Positions 1,497 through 55,600 of a stretch of 64,000 bases of DNA are shown here, piece by piece. A program made the translations under genes and the position numbers. The notes below the pieces were generated by a model. That model was given only the letters and a program-made list of their open reading frames with translations. It was not told where the DNA came from and ran no database searches. Origin of the DNA: Vitrella brassicaformis CCMP3155 (lineage: Eukaryota > Protista > Chromerida); assembly GCA_001179505.1 (NCBI GenBank), contig CDMY01000149.1, forward strand, positions 1-64,000, written 5' to 3'. Each line of letters begins with the position of its first letter. The stretch's first letter is position 1.

Positions 1497-2830
1497 AATG
1501 TCGGCCTCGAGAGAGGACGAGCGGCTTGGCGTCGTTCTTCTGGAAGTACCCATTTTCTCCAAATCGAACATCCTGTCGGGCTTGGGCAGCGTGCTGACCT
1601 GCAAGCATTCACTCGGCTGATTAGTCCGGTGCGCATGTGCGTGCCTTCCCCTTGTTATGCACGTACGTCGATCTTGTTCAGTTGGCACAAGTGGGAGAAG
1701 ATTCTGGGAGAGGTGCAAGCACACACCACACAACGCAGGCAGTGAACCGACCAGGCAGTCACATCGAAGAGGCGTACTTTGATATGAACGGAGTGCCGTC
1801 TTCGAGCACAGTGTTGAGATAGAACTCCTCCACCGTACGACGGGGGATGAGATTATCGGGGACGTCAACGTAGCTGCACGCACGCGCACACACAAACACG
1901 CACACGTCTGCCCGCGTGTGTGCGAGTGTCATCCCTACTGACGCCGTGCTGATGTGGGCGTCGGAGAAGTAGCTCAGGAACTTGGCTGGGCAGAACGAAG
2001 AACAAGGGAGAGTCGAGGCTCATCACGGGTTCTGCATAGTTGTGTGTCGTGTGGTGGTGCCCACCAGGGTCTACGGTGGCCGACATCAGCACCACCTTGA
2101 TTTGCAGGTTGGCACGCACGAGCTGTCTCACCCTCGCCTGGCACATAACATGCACACGTGCTTGGTCATCTATCTGTGAGCCACGTGCGGTAGCTTACCA
2201 TCACTATTTCGGTGTCGGCGTCGCCTTCGTGAATCTCGTCGAGAAGTGGCGAGGCCCCCGCCCTTTAGCAAATGCAGCGCAACCCCTGCGTGGCATCCAT
2301 ACGCATGCACGCACACACATACAAGACGCTCGTGTGCAGGCCTGCTTCCTCCCTCGCCATCCGGATGCATGTACGTGTGTGTGCGTGTATCGTGAGCGGC
2401 GGACCTTCTGTTACGAACATGATGGGTCTGTTGCATGGCATGGGCGTCCTTTGGTGGCCAATCCGATAGGTGACGTGATCCCTCACCTCTCCGCTGCCCA
2501 GCTTCACAACGCCGCACTCCTTAGCCACCCGCCTGGTAGAACCATCACACATACATACATACACACACACGCACTCTTGTGCTCTTTCTTACTCAGACAC
2601 ATTGGTGACAGCCAGTCGACGGGGCTGGACCGCCAGCACTCTGTCGTGGTCCTGGTTCACCAGTGTCTCAATGATGGCCACCTGTTCATTCAAGGAACCA
2701 GGCCGCACGGAACGGAAACACACACATATTGACTGGACACAGCTGAGTTTTGTGTGTGCGTACCCGTGACGATTTGCCCGAGCCCGTCCGCCCCTGCACG
2801 AGAACGCACCCGCTCTGGCTGCGTTTTGAG
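1497..2830 (-). pseudogene. DEAH/RHA (SF2) helicase fragment, motifs I-III only
   Basis: Exons encode VLVQGRTGSGKSS (Walker A, ~2770-2800), VLAVQPRRLAV (Ia), IMFVTEG (Ib), LLDEIHE (II, DEIH at 2229-2240), VVLMSATVD (III) and PRRTVEEFYL. The segment is nearly identical to ~11850-13170 and joins the kinase module at ~1497. Confidence 0.8.
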
Positions 2831-3170
2831 GTGTACTCCTGCCCACACAGAGACAGAGAGAGACCATTGCATGGATACATGCCTGCTGTATACAATTTCT
2901 GTCCTTACAGTTTCTGAACAAGGGAACGTGGAACAAGTCTCCGGGTCCAGCTAAATATAAAATGTAGGCGGCGATTGCCTCTTCCCGCCTAAAAGCGACA
3001 ACAGCAGAGACACTTGAAAGGATGACAACAGCAGATCGTCATTGTCCCGTCTCACCCTCCCTCCCACGTGTGCCTTACGTGTCCGTCTGGTTGAATTCTC
3101 GTCATCGGTATCCCTGATCTCGATGCGCGTGTCTCCCTCCATGCCGAAGGGCGCCGGCTGGCTCAACCCC

Positions 3171-3470
3171 NNNNNNNNNNNNNNNNNNNNNNNNNNNNNN
3201 NNNNNNNNNNNNNNNNNNNNNNNNNNNNNNNNNNNNNNNNNNNNNNNNNNNNNNNNNNNNNNNNNNNNNNNNNNNNNNNNNNNNNNNNNNNNNNNNNNNN
3301 NNNNNNNNNNNNNNNNNNNNNNNNNNNNNNNNNNNNNNNNNNNNNNNNNNNNNNNNNNNNNNNNNNNNNNNNNNNNNNNNNNNNNNNNNNNNNNNNNNNN
3401 NNNNNNNNNNNNNNNNNNNNNNNNNNNNNNNNNNNNNNNNNNNNNNNNNNNNNNNNNNNNNNNNNNNNNN
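3171..3470. other. Assembly gap (300 N)
   Basis: N run; the same ggctcaaccc sequence lies on both flanks. Confidence 0.99.
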
Positions 3471-3619
3471 GGCTCAACCCCCCCCCCCCCTCGCTTTCTC
3501 TCTCTGTGACTGCAAGCTGAAAGGAATGACTCTACAGTTACATCCAGCCCAGCCGCTCCCCGCCCCGCCCGGCCCGTACTGCTCCAGCCAGCAGCATGAC
3601 GGCCGAGACCCATGTGGGG

Positions 3620-4620
3620 CCGCCCTGGGGCCGCCCGCCCCGTGGATGGCCTGCAGTGCCGACAGCACCGACACGATCAGGCGCCGGTAGACGTTGGCGG
3701 CGAGCTGGAACCGGTGCCGAAGGCGGCCGAGCGTCTGGCGGATCAGCTCCGGGCTCCTCCTCTCGGCCGCAGAGAAGAGAAGAGCTGATGCCGCCAGGCC
3801 CGCCTTGATATTGGCGAGGTCGGCAAGGGTGACGGCGCCAGTCCAGAGCTCGTGCGCCCTGACGTTGCCGACAGTCACCCGCCGGTCCTCGCCCTCATCG
3901 CCACTGACTTCTGCCTCCTCCTCTGCTGCTGCTGACGCTGGTGCCTCGCACGCCGCTCTGCTCATCGTCCTCTCCCTCAGCTCCCGCATCATGTTGCAGA
4001 CGGGGTCGTCGCTGTCGTCTGAGAGACCACACAGAGCAAGACAGAAGCCGACCGACCAAATGAGTGTCGGTATGGGTGCGTCTGTCTGTCTCACCACTTT
4101 CGTTGTCATCTTCGTCCTCGTCCTCGTCAGCCTCATCCGGCTGGTCGGGTGGCGGGTGCTCCTCCTCCAGGGCGATGCGGGTGGCGGCGGGGAGAAACGC
4201 TGAATGGAGGGACAAACACGCACGACAGGCAGGCAGACAACTCCCATGAGCCACGTGTCGTGTGCATGTGTTCCTCTCCTCCCCCATAATCGACTTACCG
4301 GCATATTTATTCAGCACGTAAAACCCCTGCAGCTCCCCCGTTCTCCTCGTGTTGTGCGTCAGCGGCGGCCGCCAGCTGCCATCGAAGCCGAGGTCACGGT
4401 AGCGGTGCCACTTGGCGTCCATCAACCGGATGGTGGGCCTGCTGCCCTCCTCAATTGACCCCCAGGCCACCACTGGGGGCGTAACGGGCTGCCCCTCCCT
4501 CCCCTTGATCCCCTCCAGGGATTCTATGGCCTTGGCGTCGGCCTCCAGCCGCCTCGCCGCCACTGCCTTCTCGTCGTCACGTACGATATTGCCCAGCCCC
4601 GCCGGCACCACCGTCTTGAG
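3620..4620 (-). pseudogene. Protein-kinase-like module, copy 2 (truncated before the catalytic loop)
   Basis: VTVGNVRAHELWTGAVTLADLANIKAGL...YRRLIVSVLSALQAIHGAG is paralogous to copy 1, and so is the exon PPVVAWGSIEEG...ELQGFYVLNKYAG. Similarity stops at AIHG. Confidence 0.65.
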
Positions 4621-5340
4621 CATCAGACGGGTGTCGGGGGTAAGCAGGCCGCTGACACGCCCTCCAGCAGCATGGGGCGGTCCATGCGGACGGGCAGTCG
4701 CACCGCATACCGCCCTGACGGCTCAAAGGCCGACAAGACGGACGTGGGCAGCGAAGGCGGCTGCTGCTGCTGGTGAGGCGCCTGCGGGGGTGGGGGCTGA
4801 TCGACGTTGAAGAACGAAGCGGCGGGGGACGGCGGGCCCATCGACGGGAGCTGTGGCTGCTGGGGTGGTGGTGGTGTGGGGGAGGGCGGCTCGTACGCCT
4901 GCTGATATGGTTCCTTCTGCTCATGCTGCTGGGGCATTGTGGGGGCCATGCTGTCCTGCTGAACCATCGGCTGCAACAAAAAACACATAGAGACGGACAA
5001 TGGGCTCACTGCGAGTCTGTCTGTCCTCTCACCTTGATCTCTTGTGCCACACCGGCTTGGGCCATCATCTGCTGTGACTGTTGTGGCTGCTGCTGCAGCT
5101 GATACCCACCGCTCCCGCCCCCGATCCCCTGCTGCTGCAAGGGCCCGCCCTCCTGCTCAATCAACTGGTTCATCTCAGACGCATTCAGAGACTGAGGCTG
5201 CGACGTCCCGGGCATAATCATGCCGGGCGGCAGTAGGGGGTAGAACTCTGAGGGCATGGCGGACGGCGGACTGCTGCTCACCGTGCGCCCCTGCTGCTGG
5301 TACCCCTGCTGCTGCTGATACGCTCCCGTGGACATCCTCT
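4620..5340 (-). CDS. Gln/Pro-rich low-complexity exons within the array
   Basis: ORFs 5006-5335 and 4623-5009 are Q/P-rich and separated by a GT-AG intron-like segment (~4975-5032). Confidence 0.4.
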
Positions 5341-8300
5341 ACGCTTTTGCCACTGCGGGCGATGGCCTTGGAAGTGAAGATATTGCATCTTCTCACAGCC
5401 TCAAAACGCTCTCTGCAGGCAGGTATAGAGACAGAGAGGGAATGAGTGCGTGGTATGCACCGCTGATGCATGTGTAATCACGGCGCCTGACCGTCTGGTG
5501 GAGGAGCGTCAAGCGTGGAAAGGGCGTCCGTGTCCAGCCAAATATAAAATGTAGGCAGCGATTGCCTCTTCCCGCCTGAATAACAGCAGAGACACCATCA
5601 GAGGGACGTATAGGCCGTCGTGTCTCCGTCCCCTCGCCCTCACCCGACAGCCTCGTGACTGCAGGCACACACGAGACAGCAACACGTCCCTCTGGCTCGG
5701 TTGCAGGCCCTTCTGGAGGCTGGCACAGAGACAGAGAGACAGAGAGAGACCATGGCATGGATACATGCCTGCTATGTACGATTTCTGTCCTTACAGTTTC
5801 TGAGCGTGGGAACGTGGAAAAGGCGTCCGTGTCCAGCTAAATATAAAATGTGGGCAGCGATTGCTCTCCCCATCTGCAAAACAGCAGAGACACCATCCAA
5901 GGACAAGCCAGTGATATCTGTACAGATCATCGCCTCCTGGTCCATCACCTCCTCCTCTGTCTCCCTCTCCTCTCCCTCCTGCTACCGCTGGTGGCTGCTG
6001 GCTGGCGGAGTGCGGCCGTCCTCCTCATCCATCACTTCCTCCTCCTCCTCCCTCTCCCTCCCCTCTCCCGCCCTGGCAGGAGACGCAGCATTGCCCGCGA
6101 TGTTCGGCCGTGCCGTCGCCCTCAGTGGCTGTGCTGGCGGTCCTGCTGCTGCTGTTGAGGCGGCAGTGGTGAGCGCCATGGCGGCTGTCGGTCGAATAAG
6201 CCCCAGTCAGGGTTGTACGCCGCTGGCGCGCGTGCTGCGGTGGTCAGGTGCAGCGGGTGCGGTGCGGCCAGCTGGGCGTGTGGCGGCGGAACATGGCCGG
6301 CAAGGGGAGCGGCTGCCGCCTCCGCCTCCCGGCGAGCCCGGCAGCAAGGCGAGGCGACGAAGGGCTTCGCGCGCGACTCCCAGGGCCACTGTCTGTGGTG
6401 TGGCTGTCTCGGCGCAGGCGGCTTGTGCCGCCTTCGAGCGGGTGACCGCTCAATGGGCTTTTGGTGGGCACAGGGGGTGGGGGTGGCCACATGCAGGTGG
6501 GGTGTTGCTGATGCTGAAAGGCTGTAGAAGGCGGCGGGAGGATGCCAGGTGCCGCTCCATAGCTGAAATGCTGCTGCTGCTGTTGCTGTGGCTGGGTTGC
6601 CGATGGCATCGTGCTGATGCTGGTGCGCTTTGTTTCCTCAAGCAACAGGGGAGGCTGGTGAAAAGGACGACAGGAAGAGAGATGGGTGCACTGCTCGTAT
6701 AGATCGTCCCACAGTTTGTGTCTGCACGGCGTACCGCTTGTCGTGGCGTCAGCACGGCCTTGTGTGCACGGCATCTGCATCCGTCTCCTCATGTCCTCAT
6801 ATTCCTGCGCACAGGCAGACATACATAGACACATGAAAGACATACCTGCCTTTCTCCCTAGCTGCCTGCCCGGCGTGGCTGGCTCACCTGTTGCGGCTGC
6901 ACGAGGGACTTGAGCCCGACGCGCCCAGCACGGCGATTTCCCCTCAGCTGAGGAAAGGCATCTGCACATGGTAAGCAGTCGTTTATGCGACCTTCTTTCT
7001 TTCGTTTGGTGTATGGTGCTCCTGACTGCCTGACCTGGCACATGTATTTGTGGTAGTGGGGGTGGGTTGGCGATTTTGTGCCAGGCCCTCTGTACAGACA
7101 CCAGACGCAGACAAATAAAAGGCCGCACTTCAATGCATATTCTATATATACAGAGGGGGTCGAGCTCCTCTGGCGCCCTCCCGCTTGGCCCTCGATAGCA
7201 ACTGCACACACCGCCGCACACACACACATATGAATGAGCAGCGGCGCACCACATGGTCGTCGTCGTTGACGTCCTCGTCGTCGTCGTCGTCGTCGTCCTC
7301 GGCGGCCGTGTGGCATTTTCCAATGCGGGCCTTGGGTGTGCTGCTGCTGCAAACAGAGAAATCACAACGCTGAAAGCAAAGCTGACCAGACATCTCGTCA
7401 ACACCACCATCATTACTCAGGCCACTCGAACTCCCCTGAATGACAGCAGAGAGACCATGGTATGGATACATGCCCGCTGTGTACAATTGTCCTTACAGTT
7501 TCAGAGCGTGGGAACGTGGAAGAAGTCTCCGTGTCCAGCCAAATATAAAATGTGGGCAGCGATTGCCTCTCCCCATCTGCACAACAGCAGAGACACCATC
7601 ATAGGAAGTCCACTGGGACAAATATGTACAGGCCATGCCCCCCTCTGCTCCGCCCACTCACAACAGCAAGCATCCCTTGGCTGGCTTCTGTGTGTACCCT
7701 CTGCGCGATCATGAACTTCGCCTTCAGCTGGGCCTCGTTCATCGCCTCGCCCGTGCCGCGAGGTTCTTGAAACACATTCTCACCTTGGTGAAGAGTTGGT
7801 CGAGGAGAGGAGCCCACTCCGAGTACGTCCTGTCACTGTAGGGGATGGACTTGTCGAGGCTGAGCTCCTTGAGCGCCTCCCAGACGTGGTGCTGCTGGCC
7901 GCATCGTCTGAATACACGACGTCTTGCCAGAGGATGATCGTCGAATAGCCGAGGCCTTGCAGCACTTCCCGCGGCATGTCATGCAGGACCTCACACTCAA
8001 GGGGAGAGTGAGAAAACAACAGAAGGACGAAGATGAGTGGCGCATGGATACATTGCATGTCGTGTGCGTGCTCCTCCCTTTGTGTGTGTCCGACTCACCC
8101 GACAGAGAAGCCAGAGTTTGGATCAGATGCGGGGGTCAAGGTCGTCTCCTCGCCCGTGGCTGCGAGCAGCTCGAAATACATGCGAGGTCAGCAGTCCACT
8201 GCGAGTGAGTCGCTGACCTCGTCGCGACCACGATCGTCTGAGTAGCCGCGGCCTTGTAGTTCTTCTCGCGGCGCTGGAGGTAGCCGGGACAGCTGCAGGC

Positions 8301-46992: not shown

Positions 46993-48376
46993 ATGCAGCG
47001 GAATTCGACAATCCAGCGGGCGAATTCTGCGCCATCTGCTGTGGTGATCAGATCAGACCCTGACGGTGCTGTGCGAAGAACAAGGAACGTCTGTTCAATT
47101 GGGGACGACGCTGCCCCCAGAGAATCGAATTCTTTCTCCCCTTGGTTCCTTCCCTTCTTTGCGGAATCATATCACGTCACGTCGATGACGGAAGCGTCAG
47201 GGAGGGCATCGCGCAACAGGACTGAAGGCTCACAACCGGCCTCCAGACGACAACACGGATCCCCCACACCCAGCCAGGCGGCGTGTGAACGGGTGACTGT
47301 GACAAAGAAGGGGAAAGAATTCCAGCGAGCTCTCAGCCGTATGGAGCATCGCCTGTCCAGCAGCCCTTCACCGGGACCCTCTCTCTCCCGAGAGGACAAC
47401 ACACCCGTCCGGGATCCCTCGGCCCCACTCAGCTGTGCGATGGACACGACAACACCCACGCACTCACCCTCTTTGCTGCGGGGGTCCCCCTCGTCCATCG
47501 TCACGTCCAAGGGGCGCAGCATGAGCACCACTCGGCTTGTGGGTCTGCAGCAGCTCAAGGCCCAGAAGACCATGGACAGGCTGGAGGACAGGTCCACACA
47601 GCTCGAGAAAGAGCAGCTCATGAGGCACCACGCACTGCAGAGGAGGTGTCGACAGCTGGCTGACGAGACACATGAGCTCAGCGCCATTGTGGACCGCGTT
47701 GCGTCGTTGCGACTTTTCTCGCTCCAGGTGCTCGAGAGGCAGCACGAGAAGAGGTACGGGAAGTTCTGGGCCCCTTATCAGACCCACAAAGACAACAGGA
47801 GACGAGAAGCATATCCTTCTGCAGAGGAGAGCCAGGGCTTGCCGGAAGAGACCCCTCCAATACGGGTACGATGAAATTGGTCCTCAAGGCCTCCATGCCT
47901 TGATAGTTTTTCTGTGCGCTGTGTGTGTGCAGCCGGCCGCGCGGCAGGCACCTGAGCCTCTGCAACCCGCCGAGCCCCCTCCGTCTGAAGCCCCCGAACA
48001 CTACCCATTGCCCGTACTACCTGTGATTATTCGCGAGGGCATCCAGTCCATATGTGGCCACGACGCGTGCCGGGGCATCAGGAACCGGCTCGAGATGCGG
48101 CAAGTGAAGGAGGCCAGGGGTGGCGGGTCACCGAGACACAAGAGGAGAAGACCCAAGTCGAGGAAGAAGGCGCGTGTTGTGTTGCCGCCTCTGCCAAAGA
48201 GGGCGGTCAGCAGGCGAGAGGGGCTGGAGCAGACGGCTGATGAGACGCCGTCGACGCATCTGTCCGTGTCGGGCCCGGGTGACTGGCTGGTGTCCAAGCG
48301 GCTTGATGGTTTTTCGGGTGACGCATCACGGAGGATTGGTGAGTCCCTGGCTACGCTCTCGAGATTGTTCGACTGA
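46993..48376 (+). CDS. Orphan protein, Ser/Pro-rich with a possible coiled-coil; probably 2 exons
   Basis: A 293-aa ORF, plus an ORF continuing after an AG acceptor near 47932. No recognisable family motif. Confidence 0.4.
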
Positions 48377-48840
48377 GCTTATCAATCGGTGACCGTGCAT
48401 CATGTATTTACGCATGTTGTATGGAGCAGTGGGTACATCAATGGGGGAGCTGTGGCGCCTTGTCTATCTCATTTGTCCTCTTTTTGCTTTGTCTTGGTCC
48501 ATACATACGTACATGCGCACGTACGCACGTAGGCCAAAGGGTGCATTTGTTTGTTTGGGACATCTCCTCTGATCTGATCTGATCTGGCCTCAGTCAGTAT
48601 GGGATTCTTCTTGTATGTATCCGTGTGCATGTCTCATCCATCAATCCATCAATCCATCCGCCAACCAATAACACATGGGTACCGTCACAAAGCACACATC
48701 CGTCCACTCCCTCGCTCGCCAACAGACAGATGCATACACATGCACACACACACCAACCACCGGTGTACATTCTGTCTCTCCTTTCTCTCGTCTCTCCCTC
48801 CCTTCCTTCGCCTCTGCCGTATTTTTCTATCCCTCGCTGG

Positions 48841-51800
48841 CTAGTGCGTGAATGTGTGCACGCCAGTCTTCTCAAATTCTGCCTCTCCCTCCCCCACATT
48901 TCTTGTGAAGGTGAAGCCCATCCCACTGTCAGGCGAGTCGCCGGGCGACTGCCGGGACTGTGGTGACATTCGGGACTGGGGCGTGAGGCTGACTGAAATG
49001 TCGGCGGGCTTGCCCCCAAGGGAGGCATCGGGGAGGTCCAGGAACTGTGCCCGCCTCCCTGTCTGGTCTGGGCTGCGGGACCCGCTGCCGTAGCCGTGCA
49101 CCTTCTGCTGCCGCTCGTTGTGGGCACGCATGGCCGACGGGCTGATCACAGACAGACAGACAGACAGATGAAGGGTCAGGAAAGCATGAGACAGAAAGGC
49201 GATGGAGTAGAGCCGGCGACGGGTGGATGAATTATACTACCTCAGCGCGAATGACAGGCCCACGACGTTGGTGTAGACCTGACTTCGCATGAAGATGTCC
49301 GCTGACTCTGCGTGACGTACACATCCACCGCACCACACATGAAATGAGCGCACAAGGAGAGAAGGAGAAGATGTCTGTGTGTGTGCTCATTCCTTACTTG
49401 CTTCCGGCAGGTAGATTTCCTTTGCGAGGTCCAGGGACTGGATAATGTCCATCTGCTCATCGGTGGTGGCCTCGTCCTTCTCCAATCTATCGGGGAACCC
49501 GCCGTACGTCCGATACCGATTCAACAAATCCTCAAGCGCCTCACGTGCCTCCTTCATCTGCATGAACCCACCAACCAACCAACAGCAATCAATTGCCACA
49601 CGTATACTCTACCTCTGTGTGTGTGGGAGTCTCCCTGCGTATATGTTCGCATTGTTCACCTCTTCGACTTCCATCCCCTCTGCCTCGTATATGTAGAGGT
49701 GTGCCTTAGCCCGGTAGAGTTTGTCCCACGCCTCCCTCATGCGTTCGAGGACCTCCTGGAAGGCCGTGCAGTTGGTTAGGTACGTCACGGACAGGTCGAA
49801 CTGCTTCTCTGCAGGCGGGACGGTGCAGATGCACGAGCTGAGGCACGTGGGGATCCAGTCGGGGAAGTGGCGGTCGTACACCGTGTTGTGCGGCACCGTG
49901 CTCAGCACGTCGTTGATCTCTGATGTGGCCAGACGCTCCTTCTTTCCGCGGAACGCCGCAAATGACGCCAGAAAACGAGACGTCCGCCAGTGCTCCTGCG
50001 CAAAACGAGCCAACAACAGGTTCCGGAGTGATTCATCTTTATTTGTATGAGCTGAGCTGGAATGCGTGTGGTCGATTCTGTATGACCTACCTGTGTGTCC
50101 ACTTTGAGAGGATCGCAGTCGACAACGCAGTTTTCGCTCTGCATCATCTGTTGGGTGAGGTCCAGGATGGAATACTTGCGGTAGGCCGCCTTCTGCATCG
50201 ATGAGAGGGGGGCAGTGCCTATACCACAGACAGACACGCGAAACATGTGTGCGGGTGAGACATGAGTGCGCCTCCCTCCCCTCCGGTGTGCATACATACA
50301 TGTGATTAGGAAGTGCGTCTTGGGGAAGGGCACGAGGTTGGTGCACATCTTGCGCAGGTCGGCGTCGAGGATGCCAGGAAACCGCAGGTTGCAGGTGATG
50401 CCGCTCATGACGCGGGCCACCAGGTCGTCCATGTGCTGGAAGCGGGGCACGTTGATGTTGAGGGTCCGCTGGCAGATATTGCTCAACGCGTGATTGTCAA
50501 AGGCAAACACCTGGCCAGTCAACGCAAACTGACAGACAGATAGACCGTTGGGTGTTTGCTTGCCTGGTCGCAGCACTCAATGAGGTCTTTGAACCCCAGC
50601 ACAGCGTTGTACGGCTCGACGAGTATGTCCGACGCTAGTTCGCTGGTGAAGAGTGTGAATGTCTGCAGGATGGGCCCGAGGAGGCTCGAGTTCCTGTTGA
50701 AGAAGTCCCGCATGGAGTTGAGCATCAGACTCGTCAGACCCGAACCCGTCCCGCCCGCCAGTGAGTGGGCAAACTGCACACCCTGCAGACAGTCGCAACC
50801 CTCCACCATGCGACGCACCTTCACACGCACACACACAGATAGAGGCGTGATGCGGCCGTCCTCTCTTGTTTGCTGCCTCACTCCTTCGGTCATTGCGTCG
50901 CATATGTCAGGCCCCGATGTGTGGAAGGCCCTGGCGTAGCAGTTGCCGCTGCCCTCGTCAGTGTAAAACATATTCTCTGCACAAAAACACACACACGCGT
51001 ACCTCTATCCAAGCAGCCGCTCCGCTCACCAGGTCTGTAGAGTCTGCCGAGGTCTGTGGTCATCAGATTGTCAATGAACATCTTGTCAAGGTCAACAAGG
51101 ATCGACCGAGGCACATACCTTCACACATACAATATGCACCCAACCAACACAACATGACACACCACACCAGTGAGAGGTCCCGTCCGCCGTATGCGCTCTT
51201 CCGTCGCTCCCTGTTCCGTGACTTGCCTGCCGCTGCTGGCTTCGTCAAAGAATACGCCCACTTGCTGCAGGCGATATATATCGGCCTCGTTGCCGCAGAA
51301 TTTGCCGTGGAGCGTCCCAACTGTCTTCTCGAAATTCTGGTAGTAGATGTGGTGCTCCTCTACCAGGTCGCGCCAAAACTCGTGAGAGATGTTGTTGCCT
51401 GNNNNNNNNNNNNNNNNNNNNNNNNNNNNNNNNNNNNNNNNNNNNNNNNNNNNNNNNNNNNNNNNNNNNNNNNNNNNNNNNNNNNNNNNNNNNNNNNNNN
51501 NNNNNNNNNNNNNNNNNNNNNNNNNNNNNNNNNNNNNNNNNNNNNNNNNNNNNNNNNNNNNNNNNNNNNNNNNNNNNNNNNNNNNNNNNNNNNNNNNNNN
51601 NNNNNNNNNNNNNNNNNNNNNNNNNNNNNNNNNNNNNNNNNNNNNNNNNNNNNNNNNNNNNNNNNNNNNNNNNNNNNNNNNNNNNNNNNNNNNNNNNNNN
51701 NACAGACAGACAGAGACACCATCCCAAATCCGCAGGACTGACGCTTACCCGCACGGCCGACTTGCACCTGCACCCACCCAAGCATCCATCGGCACACCCG

Positions 51801-52393
51801 CCATACCTCCAGCCCCGCCTGTGTGTGCTGTGCTGTGCCGTGCCATGTTGTGCTTTGGTGGGTTGACTCACGTGTATGATTTCTCGGTTGTTAGATGAGA
51901 AAGGTATGCCCTTGCTGGCCTGAAGTTCCCTGGGCGAGAGTGTCTTGCGTGCCCCGGGCGAGCCATCCCCGACAAATGCGGTGCTAGTGGTGGTCATGTC
52001 GCCAGTCTGCAGCCCCTCGCCCCTCTTGGCAGCTACCACAGCAGCGGCGAAGGGGTCCACGCGCTTCTTGCCCGGCTTGGTCGAGAGGTCAACGAACAGC
52101 CCCCCCGGCGCCGCGGCCTCATCTCGGTAGCCTCTCACTCTGGCAGGGCTGCTTGTGCGTGGCTCGAGGTTGCCTGGCGTGGCCTTGCCCGCTGCAGGGG
52201 TGGCATCGGTCAGCTGCAGTGGGGTCTTGGGCAGCTGGAGCGTTGAAGAGTCGGGAGCGTTGGAGAACTGGACAGTGGCGTCGGTCTTGTCGAATGGCGT
52301 CGGGGGAGGCTTGTCTGCCGTCTGGTACTCCAGCTGCGACACGTCGATGGGTCCGCCGGGAGGCTTGCTGTCCACGGCCTTGGTAGTATGCAT
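48841..52393 (-). CDS. Highly divergent beta-like tubulin with N- and C-terminal extensions
   Basis: REIIH|VQVGRA|GNNISHEFW, RYVPRSILVDLD, CDCLQGVQFAHSLAGGTGSG, VEPYNAVL, LRFPGILDADLRKMCTNLVPFP and YEAEGMEVEE|MKEAREALEDL are colinear with beta-tubulin. Confidence 0.85.
51402..51701. other. Assembly gap (300 N), inside a tubulin intron
   Basis: N run. Confidence 0.99.
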
Positions 52394-52679
52394 GACCCCA
52401 GCGACCGACAAAAGAACCAACGATCACCACTGACAGTGCAGGAGCATTGCGCGATCCACGACGATGAACCGGCCGTTCCGCGACGAGGGAAGACCTGCGT
52501 TGATCATAAGACGCAGTCTCACGATGGGGGCTGCATGCACGCCCCCAGGGTAGTAGCTCGCAAACTGGAGTTTCGATGGGTGCGAGGACCTGCCATCCGA
52601 TAGCGGTGTGGTCGATTGCCATCTCACTCATTCCGAGGAGTGGGTGATACAGACAGGAGGAGGACGCGCGCTACCAGCC

Positions 52680-55600
52680 ATGATGAGGCTGCCGCAAGGG
52701 AGAAGCGACCACAAGGTGGGCGTGCCATCGCAGCCATGTGTGTCCACAGCTTACCCACCCACCCACTGGCTGGCTTTGTGTTGGTGGCTTGGCAGCACGG
52801 AGCGCACAGCTCGGCGGCGCCTCGGATACGCACCATGGAGGCACTGGTGAGGGAGAGAGTCACAGGGGAGGGATCAGAGAGGGAGCGAGGGAAGGTAGAC
52901 GCAGACAGACAGACAAACAGACGGGCAAGGTGGGCAAGGCACCAAGCGTCGCATCATCATCGCTTGTGTTGGTGTATGTGTGTCTGTCTGTCTGTCCGTC
53001 TGTGGTGTGTTGTGTCTGTGTCTGTGGTGTGATCCATCCGTCCGTTTGTCCGTCCGTCGTCAGCGTCAGAATGACGACCCGACATCTCGTACGTATGCCA
53101 AGTGGCAGTCGATGATGGACCGGGACATCAGCTTCTTCATGTCCAAACACCACTCAACTTTCATCCGACGATTCAAACGGTCAGTCAGTCAGTCAGTCAG
53201 TCACGGGATGGGTGGGTGGACGGACGGAGCAGCCACACGCACCACCCGCCACATGCTTTGCTCTCTGTGTGCGTGTGCGTACGTCGGTCGGTATGACTGC
53301 ATTCAGAGGTGTGCCACAGGCGTTTCGTTGGGAGGTGTGGAAGGCTGCGACGGACTACACGGCCAAGTACCAGAAGGACGTGTACGCCACCCTCCACAAC
53401 GAGACCAACAAATACACCTCACTCATCACCATCGACACACCAAGGTCGGTCAGTCAGCCAGGGAATGGGGCAGGGAGGGTAACACTCGATATCCATGTGT
53501 GTATGCATTTGTGTGGCTGCCGGTCGTCCTGCAGGACCTTCCCCGAGTTGAAAGAGTTCGATGCACGGTCGCAGCGAACACTATTCAGAATACTGGTGAG
53601 TGAGTGAGTGAGTGGGAAAAGAACTGACTGCTGGCTGGCCAAACGGGTCCCTCAGTCTCGCTCCCTCCTCCATGTGTCACATGGTGTGTGTACGGTCAGA
53701 ATGCGTATGCGAATCATATGCCTGAAGTGGGCTACTGCCAGGGCATGAACTTCATCGCAGGTACTTACTTGCCACACACACACACACACACTGCACCTTT
53801 GTGACCACGGTTGCTTGACGTATCCACGTTGTTTTGCTCATGCATGGTAAACCTACAGGTTTTTTGTTGATAGTGAGTGATTTTCGTGAGGAGGAGGCGT
53901 TTTGGGTGTTTGTGTGTCTGATGGACTTCTACGACCTCAACTTCTTCTTCCGAGAGAAATTCCCACTACTCAGACGATACCTCAAGGGTATGTGTGCACA
54001 CACGGCCGACCACACTCCTCACCCATTTACCGCTGTGTATGTGTTGATGTGCGTGTGTGCAGCATTTGAGAGTCTGGCTGAGCTGCACATCCCCGACATC
54101 CACCAGCACTTCCTCAATGAAGGCCTCCTGCCAGCCGTCTACCTACACCAATGGTACCCATCCATCGTCTTACGCACCCAATCGGGGTATACACACATCG
54201 TGACTGACTGACGGATGTCGCTCTGGGGGTGCGGTGCAGGTTTCTGACCTTGTTCATCAATTGCTTGCCGATGTGCACTGTGCTGGTGCTGTGGGACTAC
54301 ATCATATGCGAGGGGCTGCCCGCCATACTCAACATATCACTCGCACTTCTCAAGGTCAGTCAACCACACTACACAACCTGGTCGACTGACTGACTGACTG
54401 GTTGGCTGCAGGTGTTGCGGAATGCGCTGGTGACATTGCGGTTTGAGGAGATCGTTCGGTTCCTCAAGTCGATGCGGGCGGGGGGCGACTGCGATGAGGT
54501 CATGATCGGCAGGCTGCTCGTGCGACAAGCCGAGAAGATCGAAATCCAACAGACCCTGTACGAGGTAGGTAGATGACAGGAGGCAGGCCGTCATGGTGCA
54601 TCCATGGGTCTGTCCTCGTACTGACTGATTGGGTCATTGGTTCTCATGCAATGCATTGCAGCATTTGGTGCATTTCGACGAGGCTGAGTTGCTGCGTCAG
54701 GCCCAAGAGGAGGATGAGGAGAGCTTGGCGTCGGCCATCAGCAGCCGGCGTGAGGGCTCGACTACCACGGCCAACGTCTCGGCCACCCCCTCATCCACCA
54801 GCCCCCCGGCGTCCCTCCACCCCTCGCCCAGCGCCCCATCTATATCGATAGCCATAGCGCCCCCGCCCCCCCTGCCGCCACACATGACGAGCGAGACGGA
54901 CATCAAGGCAAGGGCCAGGGCTGGCAGCAGGCCACTCGTCGACCTCGGCAGCAGGCAAAGCATACGAGTCGAATTCACGCCTTCAGCCGGTGAGTGAGCA
55001 CACGGCATGCACTGTACGGCAGGCAGGGTTGTGTCACCGTGTGTGTTGTTCTCACCGTGTGTGCCATGCATTCAGAGGCGACTGAGTTGGATCCAGCGCT
55101 GCTTTTCATTGCAGACGAAAAGGGTGACACACGCACACCAACACCAACACGAGACGATTGATGCCCATGTTGTGCAGTGCACCAGCCAGCCCCCTGTTCT
55201 GTCTGCTATGTGGACAGATTCCAACCGCGACAGTGACGATGAAGGATCGTCCGGCCCGTCATCTTCCCGCAGGCGCCCCTCCCCCTCACGCAGCATCGCC
55301 GACAACACACACACGTCGGCCGCTCGCGCCCCCTCCATGCCCCCTCCCTCCCGGGCACGGGACGACTCCCACCATGCGCCCAGCGACGCCAGCTCAGACC
55401 CTGTCTCATTGCCCAACTCACCAGCACTCGAGGTCTTTGTCCACAAGGGGCTGGCCAAAGGGGACCACCACACACGTACGTAAGGCAGAGGCCAAGTGCG
55501 TTTCATTCAAATGAGTGAGGAGTCGGATCACAGGCCTGCCTGCCTGCCTTTCGTCTGTTGTGTGTTGTGTCAGTTGATGCTGGGTCTCCTGGTGCGGTGG

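What the first reader, a model, noticed from the sequence alone, without database searches (positions are those of the whole stretch)
48841..52393. Giant divergent beta-like tubulin: ~168-aa N-terminal extension, ~150-aa non-acidic C-terminal extension, altered GTP motifs
Seen: exon 1 (52393-51872, 174 codons, T/P/S-rich) ends in NREIIH. It splices to a 19-nt microexon (51767-51749, VQVGRA-G) and then to GNNISHEFW, so the canonical MREI start is buried ~168 residues inside the protein. There is an insertion after EEH. The signature GGGTGSG reads AGGTGSG, GAGNNWAKG reads GSGNCYARA, and the T7 loop GQLNADLRK reads GILDADLRK (keeping the beta-type Lys). After the last helix there is no E-rich tail; ~150 more residues follow (...RSPDQTGRR...SPQSRQSPGDSPD...). 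Established: alpha/beta tubulins start at MRE and end in acidic tails, and ciliates have divergent beta-like tubulins. Inference: a specialised tubulin for a non-canonical structure (conoid/pseudoconoid, flagellar or basal-body associated), or a non-polymerising regulator.
Basis: partly seen in the sequence, partly recalled or inferred. Interest (0 to 1): 0.75.

Follow-up and report, generated by a model that had tools for sequence, protein, structure and literature searches.

The report
Expressed divergent beta-like tubulin, myzozoan subfamily
The alga Vitrella brassicaformis really transcribes a 784-residue tubulin with long floppy ends, and it belongs to a conserved beta-like tubulin subfamily, apparently undescribed, that is shared by dinoflagellates, perkinsids and chromerids and was not found in true apicomplexan parasites.

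Summary
A 12-exon minus-strand gene (52393-48841) encodes 784 residues: a 168-residue N-terminal extension, a tubulin core and 156 residues after helix H12.

All eleven splice junctions appear in intron-free contigs of two public runs. These include exon 1 to the 19-nt microexon to exon 3, and two GC-AG introns. One transcriptome contig carries the whole ORF. The N gap lies inside intron 2 and is flanked by a poly-G tract. It does not touch the reading frame.

The public record for this gene (Vitrella brassicaformis CCMP3155, auto-named "Tubulin beta chain") has the same length, and its own transcript contig shows exactly my exon blocks.

The protein is not an orphan. Vitrella has a second copy (about 80% identical, core dN/dS 0.10). 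Relatives at 43-51% identity occur in Chromera, Digyalum, Perkinsus, Amoebophrya, Oxyrrhis and many dinoflagellates.

- **Motifs.** The "altered" GTP motifs are near-invariant signatures of this clade.
- **C-terminus.** A non-acidic extension of about 50 residues is shared by the clade.
- **Long ends.** The long N- and C-terminal ends occur only in chromerids and Digyalum and are predicted disordered.
- **Placement.** The clade is closest to beta-tubulin (about 40-48% identity) but lies outside the canonical beta clade. Its deeper position is unresolved.

Function is untested. I found no paper describing the clade.

The parts
52394..52510 (-). 5' leader of the mRNA. It holds an upstream ORF: ATG at 52507 and again at 52447, same frame as the main ORF, stop at 52426-52424.
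   Evidence: Transcript contig L024 starts at 52510. The X6 contig reaches 52506 and then runs into adapter sequence. Sequence read.
51872..52393 (-). Exon 1: 174 codons. It encodes the N-terminal extension (residues 1-168) plus NNREIIH, the start of strand S1.
   Evidence: Contiguous in the RNA-type contigs X1, X6 and L024. GC3 is 75%. 251 of 20000 shuffles are stop-free. No Pfam match. AlphaFold2 pLDDT is about 30.
51749..51767 (-). Exon 2: a 19-nt microexon (VQVGRA + first base of Gly) that begins the T1 loop.
   Evidence: X1 joint 51397>51748 with a loose end matching the end of exon 1. X6 carries 15 letters of the microexon between 51399 and 51869. L024 block 640-659. The paralogue has it fused to exon 3.
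51399..51748 (-). Intron 2. It contains the assembly gap 51402-51701 and a poly-C tract on the gene strand. Its true length is unknown.
   Evidence: RNA contigs skip it exactly. DNA contigs of X2 end in G21-24 on both sides of the gap.
51227..51398 (-). Exon 3 (H1 and the H1-S2 loop with the clade insertion). The donor of intron 3 is GC.
   Evidence: The 51117>51226 joint reads CT..GC when shifted by 1.
51030..51118 (-). Exon 4 (S2-H2 region, YVPRSILVDL...).
50882..50976 (-). Exon 5. T3 loop GSGNCYARA at 50953-50927.
   Evidence: N-C is invariant in 52 of 52 clade members.
50564..50818 (-). Exon 6. T4 signature AGGTGSG at 50758-50738, and T5 EPYN. The donor of intron 6 is GC.
   Evidence: Pfam Tubulin, 59 bits. 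The 60 best PDB matches are all beta-tubulin. Junctions.
50300..50510 (-). Exon 7 (H7, T7 loop GILDADLRK at 50375-50349, start of the M loop).
50091..50218 (-). Exon 8 (M loop, H9, start of the clade-specific insertion of about 10 residues in the H9-S8 loop).
   Evidence: Pfam Tubulin_C..
49660..49995 (-). Exon 9 (S8 to H11; FPDWIP motif).
   Evidence: Pfam Tubulin_C. This exon was the query of the exhaustive search that returned the annotated protein and its relatives.
49398..49557 (-). Exon 10: H12 plus the clade-conserved non-acidic C-terminal segment. Predicted helix of residues 642-655 at 49461-49420.
   Evidence: Conserved across the clade. pLDDT 65-76. dN/dS 0.20 against the paralogue.
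49241..49307 (-). Exon 11 (start of the tail seen only in Vitrella).
   Evidence: 67 letters sit between the exon-12 and exon-10 blocks in X1 and X6. L024 block 2105-2171.
48841..49141 (-). Exon 12: S/G/R/P-rich tail and the stop codon (48843-48841).
   Evidence: pLDDT below 50. dN/dS of exons 11+12 is 0.31 against the paralogue.
48669..48840 (-). 3' UTR, at least this far.
   Evidence: RNA-type contigs X6 and X1 end at 48669 and 48686. L024 runs on into the convergent neighbour gene.

Best explanation
Shown:
- This is a functional, transcribed gene for one of two Vitrella copies of a beta-tubulin-like subfamily inherited vertically within Myzozoa (chromerids, the squirmid Digyalum, perkinsids, dinoflagellates).
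- The core is a complete tubulin fold.
- Both ends are predicted disordered and are lineage-specific in length and sequence.

Inferred mechanism:
- The protein still binds GTP. T1 G-x-x-G-N, T4 xGGTGSG, T5 EPYN and T6 DN are kept.
- It takes the beta position against an alpha-type partner, because the T7 loop keeps the beta-type Lys rather than the catalytic Glu of alpha.
- It can probably make lateral lattice contacts, because the M-loop Tyr and Arg are kept.
- It probably builds or marks a special subset of microtubule-like polymers.
- The acidic E-hook tail is replaced by a conserved non-acidic segment of about 50 residues with a helix. It should therefore escape polyglutamylation and polyglycylation and present a different surface to motors and MAPs.
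- The buried MREI start should remove it from the co-translational autoregulation that acts on canonical beta-tubulin.
- The Vitrella-specific disordered ends most likely act as spacers or docking regions.
For: **Gene and transcript.** All 11 junctions are seen in intron-free contigs of two runs. One transcript contig holds the full 784-residue ORF. The database record has the same length (784 residues), its exon-9 segment sits at the same residues, and its transcript contig shows exactly my exon blocks.

**Fold.** Pfam Tubulin and Tubulin_C match. AlphaFold2 gives the core a pLDDT above 90. Foldseek's best matches are chains B and D of tubulin complexes, with TM 0.96-0.97 and rmsd 1.3-1.7 A.

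**Beta affinity.** The best 60 PDB matches are all beta-tubulin, both for exon 6 and for the N-terminal 130 residues of the Perkinsus member. Identity is 42-48% to beta, against 34-39% to gamma and 34-36% to alpha.

**Clade.** It is monophyletic at 100/99, and its internal branching follows the organisms. The named members all belong to Myzozoa.

**Constraint.** Motifs are near-invariant in 52 members. dN/dS between the two Vitrella copies is 0.10 for the core, 0.20 for exon 10 and 0.31 for exons 11-12.

**Ends.** pLDDT is below 50 for residues 1-152, 157-167 and 661-784. They have no Pfam match. The N-terminal extension of the paralogue is unrelated in sequence.
Against: - Nothing here shows polymerisation, a partner or a location.
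- The tree does not place the clade as sister to beta. The AU test gives p 0.49 for that, but it also fails to reject a link to gamma (0.42), the epsilon-like copy (0.31) or alpha (0.26).
- Nucleotide-contacting positions do differ from beta: T1 Q to R/K, T3 N-W to C-Y, and the H7 Tyr to Met/Phe.
- A language-model look-up put gamma, epsilon and delta clusters nearest.
- There is no peptide evidence that residues 1-168 are translated.
Confidence: 0.55

Rival explanations
1. A non-polymerising tubulin. It would act as a cap, nucleator or regulator, in the way gamma, delta and epsilon act at organising centres and basal bodies. For example, it could bind alpha through its beta-like minus face while its altered plus face blocks further addition.
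For: The strongest clade-specific changes lie in T1, T3 and T4, around the nucleotide on the plus-end face, while T7 stays beta-like. T4 starts with A/S/C, as in the Vitrella gamma copy (IAGGTGSG), and the N-terminal strand resembles gamma. The Atlas features point to gamma, epsilon and delta clusters. A link to gamma is not rejected (p 0.42).
Against: Identity to beta exceeds that to gamma by 6-12 points. All best PDB and Foldseek matches are beta. The M-loop Tyr and Arg used for lateral contacts are kept in 52 and 48 of 52 members.
Confidence: 0.25
2. The long N-terminal extension is not made. Translation would start downstream (Met133) or be damped by the upstream ORF, so the real protein would be about 650 residues with a 36-residue lead.
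For: An upstream ORF sits in the leader (ATG at 52507 and 52447, stop at 52426-52424). The only other in-frame Met before the core is residue 133. The extension has no homologue in the paralogue and is predicted disordered.
Against: The ATG at 52393 is the first one after the upstream ORF's stop. The ORF is open for 174 codons (1.3% of shuffles are) and has coding-type GC3 of 75%. Chromera and Digyalum carry extensions of 114 and 112 residues. The stretch just before REI is conserved with Chromera (IPFSSNN against VPYSSHN). Even a start at Met133 leaves an extension and no MREI start.
Confidence: 0.12
3. It belongs to an already named minor group: delta, epsilon or zeta, or the 'theta/iota' and beta-like tubulins of ciliates that sit at the base of beta.
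For: Deep nodes are unresolved. Findeisen et al. 2014 (PMC4202323) place Paramecium theta/iota, together with Tetrahymena, Oxytricha and Naegleria sequences, at the base of beta. An alveolate-wide origin is therefore conceivable.
Against: Vitrella has its own gamma, delta-like and epsilon-like genes, all distinct from this one. A link to delta is marginally rejected (p 0.049). No ciliate sequence appeared above canonical beta in either word search. Tetrahymena BLT1 and BLT4 are 65% and 56% identical to beta (PMC3382179), far closer than this clade's roughly 40%.
Confidence: 0.12
4. A decaying duplicate of beta-tubulin, transcribed but without function.
For: Long branch, changed GTP motifs, loss of the acidic tail.
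Against: There are no stops or frameshifts. All introns are spliced. dN/dS is 0.10. The 'changes' are invariant across 52 sequences from distant lineages.
Confidence: 0.02

Closest known systems
Canonical beta-tubulin
   Same: Complete tubulin fold, with TM 0.96-0.97 to beta chains. It is the best sequence match in every region tested. It shares the T7 D-L-R-K with the beta-type Lys, the M-loop Tyr/Arg, EPYN and DN.
   Different: Identity is only 40-48%, about as far as alpha is from beta (43%). It falls outside the canonical beta clade at 100/99 support. There is no Met-Arg-Glu-Ile start and no acidic tail. The T1, T3 and T4 signatures are changed. It has insertions after beta residues 33, 162, 307 and 340.
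Ciliate non-canonical beta-like tubulins (Tetrahymena BLT1/BLT4; Paramecium theta/iota)
   Same: They are lineage-restricted beta-like paralogues with altered GTP-site and interface residues. They lack the axoneme and polymodification motifs in the tail. BLT1 and BLT4 build non-axonemal (nuclear division and cortical) microtubules (PMC3382179). This is the best functional analogy.
   Different: BLT1 and BLT4 are 65% and 56% identical to beta and only 458-471 residues long. This clade is about 40% identical, has a conserved C-terminal segment of about 50 residues and, in chromerids, extensions of more than 100 residues. Kinship was not tested, because I had no ciliate sequences to hand.
Gamma-tubulin
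   Same: T4 begins with Ala (AGGTGSG). The N-terminal strand and the VFF motif resemble the Vitrella gamma copy.
   Different: Identity is lower (34-39%). The T7 loop is of beta type, not gamma type. Vitrella has a separate, ordinary gamma gene on C373.

Membership tests
Tubulin superfamily (Pfam PF00091 + PF03953) | Tubulin/FtsZ GTPase domain and tubulin C-terminal domain | tested here: met
   Exon 6 scores 59 bits against a cut-off of 33. Exons 8 and 9 match Tubulin_C above its cut-off. The database record carries both families.
Tubulin superfamily | Glycine-rich T4 signature [SAG]-G-G-T-G-[SA]-G (pattern quoted from memory) | tested here: met
   AGGTGSG at residues 320-326. The clade has S, C, A or G at the first position.
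Tubulin superfamily | Tubulin fold | tested here: met
   AlphaFold2 core pLDDT above 90. Foldseek TM 0.96-0.97 and rmsd 1.3-1.7 A to beta chains.
Canonical beta-tubulin | Falls inside the clade of beta-tubulins from all eukaryote groups | tested here: not met
   Canonical beta forms a clade at 100/99 that excludes it. A sister relation is neither supported nor rejected (p-AU 0.49).
Canonical beta-tubulin | Highest similarity to beta among the tubulin classes | tested here: met
Canonical beta-tubulin | N-terminus Met-Arg-Glu-Ile (autoregulation signal) | tested here: not met
   REI starts at residue 170 and is preceded by Asn. 45 of 46 clade members with a recognisable start carry extra residues there.
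Canonical beta-tubulin | Acidic, Glu-rich C-terminal tail | tested here: not met
   156 residues follow H12. Residues 663-784 are 10% Asp+Glu with net charge +1.
Canonical beta-tubulin | T7 loop with Lys in place of the catalytic Glu of alpha | tested here: met
   GILDADLRK. Lys is present in 48 of 52 clade members.
Delta / epsilon / zeta / gamma tubulin | Groups with that class in a tree | tested here: inconclusive
   With the delta-like copy, p-AU 0.049. With the epsilon-like copy 0.31. With gamma 0.42. Each class was represented only by one partial Vitrella sequence. No zeta was available. Identity is lower than to beta.
Ciliate theta/iota/BLT 'basal beta' group | Groups with those sequences | not tested
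   No ciliate beta-like sequences could be fetched. None ranked above canonical beta.

The most novel reading that the evidence does not exclude
The clade is a distinct, so far unnamed tubulin class of Myzozoa. It arose before dinoflagellates and the apicomplexan lineage split and was lost in true apicomplexans. It pairs with a dedicated divergent alpha-like tubulin (Vitrella has one on contig C1045) to build a specialised polymer that canonical tubulin does not make.
Probability: 0.15. Interest if true: 0.85.

Novelty: new variant of a known kind. Interest (0 to 1): 0.62.

Why it matters
Tubulin classes are few and mostly ancient. A conserved extra subfamily, as far from beta as alpha is, would be a new entry in the cytoskeletal parts list of alveolates. 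It occurs in ecologically dominant dinoflagellates, in the oyster parasite Perkinsus and in the algal relatives of malaria parasites.

Its absence from true apicomplexans in my searches suggests it belongs to a structure that was lost or rebuilt on the road to parasitism. Genetic tools now exist for Chromera (PMC12407925) and Perkinsus (bioRxiv 10.1101/2021.06.11.447996, title and abstract seen, paper not read). Its location and partner are therefore directly testable.

The gene is also a clean example of a tubulin that tolerates disordered additions of more than 100 residues at both ends.

Tried and rejected
**Plastid or secretory targeting.** I considered this for the N-terminal extension and rejected it. 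No hydrophobic stretch exists: the highest Kyte-Doolittle mean over 15 residues within the first 40 residues is -0.33.

**Known domain in either extension.** None was found in Pfam for Vitrella, Chromera, Digyalum or Perkinsus.

**Homologue of exon 1 near the paralogue.** None was found within the rest of its contig that I held.

**Mixture-model tree.** The first run was killed by the sandbox. All trees reported use LG+G4, so long-branch effects are not controlled.

**ESM Atlas look-up.** It gave gamma, epsilon and delta clusters by features. It provides no alignment, and I treated it only as a sign of divergence.

**Is the alpha-like gene on C1045 spread over the same organisms?** I could not test this. 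Its longest stop-free exon frame is 162 residues, too short for the word search to reach full-length relatives.

**Literature.** Seven searches and four papers gave no description of the clade. Subscription journals are not covered.

**Joined model.** I sent no hand-joined spliced sequence to any search tool. Searches went exon by exon by reference. After that I used the database's own record P0001. The only joins were made inside local scripts: to translate the model and to chain HMM-matched exon pieces of the Vitrella paralogues for the tree.
Full report
**What is in the sequence.** On the minus strand, an ATG at 52393 opens a 174-codon exon that ends in NREIIH and is followed by GTGAGT. A 19-nt microexon (51767-51749) and an exon starting at 51398 continue the frame. 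Together they read REIIH-VQVGRAG-NNISHEFW, which has exactly the spacing of the N-terminal strand and T1 loop of beta-tubulin. Nine further exons run to a stop at 48843-48841. That gives 12 exons and 784 residues. Introns 3 and 6 have GC donors. Pfam finds the Tubulin domain on exon 6 and Tubulin_C on exons 8 and 9, and nothing on exons 1, 10 and 12.

**The gap and the transcript.** The N run (51402-51701) lies between the microexon and exon 3, so I tested this first.
- Two public runs hold about 62% of the words of the stretch. Their contigs lack all eleven introns, so they are cDNA-type assemblies.
- Run X1 joins 51749 to 51398 and ends in the last eight bases of exon 1.
- Run X6 joins exon 3 to exon 1 with 15 letters of the microexon in between, and runs on to 52506.
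- The same runs confirm the two GC-AG introns and the exon 10-11-12 joins.
- A transcriptome contig from JGI (L024, 3992 nt) carries all 12 exons: eleven at 100% identity and exon 9 at 99.7% (one mismatch in 344 bases). It starts at 52510 and has the ORF at 118-2472.
- DNA contigs of run X2 stop on both sides of the gap in runs of 21-24 G, which explains the assembly break.
- In the paralogue, microexon and exon 3 form one exon.

The gap is therefore intronic and the frame is continuous. Contigs cannot show expression level or the exact 5' end.

**Is the N-terminal extension coding?**
- The ATG at 52393 is the first after a short upstream ORF that ends at 52424. The only other in-frame Met before the core is residue 133.
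- Exon 1 is stop-free in frame, which 1.3% of its shuffles are. It has four stops in each other frame, and GC3 of 75% against 54% GC in introns.
- The residues just before REI are conserved with Chromera.
- Translation itself is not shown.

**Organism and record.** The genome has 72.7 Mb in 1064 contigs. The exhaustive search with exon 9 returned a 784-residue protein, 100% identical over exon 9, with that segment at residues 498-609 as in my model. The word search lists it as an unnamed protein of Vitrella brassicaformis CCMP3155, auto-named "Tubulin beta chain". Its transcript contig translates to it, and that contig's blocks coincide with my exons.

**Relatives.**
- Vitrella has a second copy on contig C855. 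It is 83-90% identical in exons 3-7 and 9, and less so in exons 8 and 10-12. Its annotated model (531 residues) is truncated and mis-spliced, and its N-terminal part is unrelated in sequence.
- Beyond Vitrella, proteins at 43-51% identity occur in Chromera velia (650 residues), Digyalum oweni (626), Perkinsus marinus and P. chesapeaki, Amoebophrya, Oxyrrhis, Gymnodinium, Biecheleria and several Symbiodiniaceae. Many unnamed marine contigs also carry them.
- Canonical beta-tubulins score about 40%.
- A second search from the Digyalum protein, which is the member nearest to apicomplexans, found Vitrella as its closest single-domain relative. It found no coccidian, haemosporidian, gregarine or Cryptosporidium counterpart, only their ordinary beta-tubulins.
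- That absence rests on heuristic searches that list only 120 rows.

**Clade features (52 members).**
- T3 reads N-D-E-G-S-G-N-C-Y-A-K-A, with N-C in 52 of 52 members.
- T1 reads V-G-(K/R)-(A/S)-G-N.
- T4 reads (S/C/A/G)-G-G-T-G-S-G.
- EPYN and DN are kept.
- T7 ends D-L-R-K in 48 of 52.
- The M-loop Tyr and Arg are kept.
- Insertions follow beta residues 33, 162, 307 (about 10 residues) and 340.
- After H12 nearly all members have 43-59 non-acidic residues with a conserved helix. Chromera has 85 and Vitrella 156.
- Before REI there are 0-29 residues in 43 of 46 members, but 112, 114 and 168 in Digyalum, Chromera and Vitrella.

Only the great length of the ends is lineage-specific.

**Placement.** I built partial sequences of the other Vitrella tubulin genes by chaining HMM-matched exon frames. 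These are two beta, two alpha, one gamma, one delta-like, one epsilon-like and one divergent alpha-like gene.
- In an LG+G4 tree of 40 rows, the clade is monophyletic (100/99) and canonical beta is monophyletic without it (100/99). Inside the clade, the Perkinsus, dinoflagellate and unnamed marine rows form one group (100/100). Chromera, Digyalum and Vitrella fall outside that group but are not resolved as a group of their own.
- The deeper nodes are open.
- AU tests do not reject a link to beta (0.49), gamma (0.42), the epsilon-like copy (0.31) or alpha (0.26). They marginally reject a link to delta (0.049).
- To keep the second tree small I left out Mnemiopsis, Tetrabaena, Ammonia, Daphnia, Drosophila, Prorocentrum and four environmental or MMETSP sequences.
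- The delta-like and epsilon-like rows fill under half of the columns, and no zeta was available.
- By identity, the clade is 42-48% from beta, 34-39% from gamma and 34-36% from alpha over the same columns. Beta and alpha differ by 43%.
- The best 60 solved chains are all beta-tubulin for two separate regions.

The fair statement is: beta-like by similarity, class-level in divergence, deep position unresolved.

**Structure and constraint.** AlphaFold2 with the clade alignment gives a confident tubulin core (residues 168 to about 640, mostly above 90). It gives a moderately confident extra helix at 642-655, and pLDDT below 50 for 1-152, 157-167 and 661-784. Foldseek's top matches are the beta chains of tubulin complexes. 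Between the two Vitrella copies, dN/dS is 0.10 in the core, 0.20 in exon 10 and 0.31 in exons 11-12. Even the Vitrella-specific tail is therefore under some constraint.

**Mechanism: what is shown and what is inferred.**
- *Shown:* a spliced mRNA, an intact ORF, purifying selection, the tubulin fold and clade conservation.
- *Inferred from established tubulin biology:* GTP binding; a beta-type role opposite an alpha partner (Lys in T7); lattice competence (M-loop Tyr); no tail polymodification or E-hook contacts; no MREI-dependent autoregulation.

The closest analogy is the Tetrahymena beta-like tubulins, which lack tail motifs and build non-axonemal arrays (PMC3382179). A capping or nucleating role is the main rival.

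**Literature.** Findeisen et al. 2014 recognise six classes and place ciliate theta and iota at the base of beta. A 2025 Chromera preprint counts only the canonical alpha and beta genes. No paper found names this clade or its Chromera gene.

**Earlier scan notes.** One note (s1-227067) flags another divergent beta-like tubulin elsewhere in this genome. It may be the C855 copy, but I did not check.

Noticed in passing
G000:C855, locus L023 about 3870-6137 (minus strand): Second copy of the same beta-like tubulin. Microexon and exon 3 are fused there. Homologues of exons 10-12 exist in the DNA, but the public model (531 residues) stops after exon 9 and skips exon 4. Its N-terminal 115 residues are unrelated to exon 1 and may belong to a wrongly fused upstream gene.
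   Followed up: partly
G000:C1045, locus L030 about 2446-4957 (minus strand): A very divergent alpha-like tubulin gene, split into many short exons. It groups with alpha at 99/93 on a long branch and keeps a Glu at the T7 catalytic position. It is a candidate partner for the beta-like protein. Its taxonomic spread could not be searched.
   Followed up: partly
window 52424-52507: Upstream ORF in the mRNA leader, in the same frame as the main ORF (ATG at 52507 and 52447, stop TGA at 52426-52424). It may damp translation.
   Followed up: no
window 51119-51226 and 50511-50563: Two GC-AG introns (donor AG|GCAAG), both confirmed by cDNA-type contigs.
   Followed up: yes
window 51402-51701: The assembly gap is flanked in DNA contigs by runs of 21-24 G. 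The letters just outside the two runs differ, so there may be more than one tract, or read errors.
   Followed up: partly
window 47254-48840 and 52640-52850: The gene is tightly packed. A convergent plus-strand gene, with an intron at 47866-47931, overlaps its 3' UTR in the transcript contig. A plus-strand transcript with a GT..AG intron (52714-52793) starts about 150-200 bases upstream of the 5' end.
   Followed up: partly
loci L029 (C113), L031 (C373), L032-L034 (C640, C781): The tubulin complement of Vitrella also includes one gamma, one delta-like and a duplicated epsilon-like gene, beside two alpha and two beta genes. The C640 and C781 copies are nearly identical.
   Followed up: partly
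P0001 residues 109-111; P0006 65-67; P0003 46-48: Each of the three long N-terminal extensions holds one small basic cluster (KKR, RKK, RRK). This is a weak lead towards nuclear import and nothing more.
   Followed up: no
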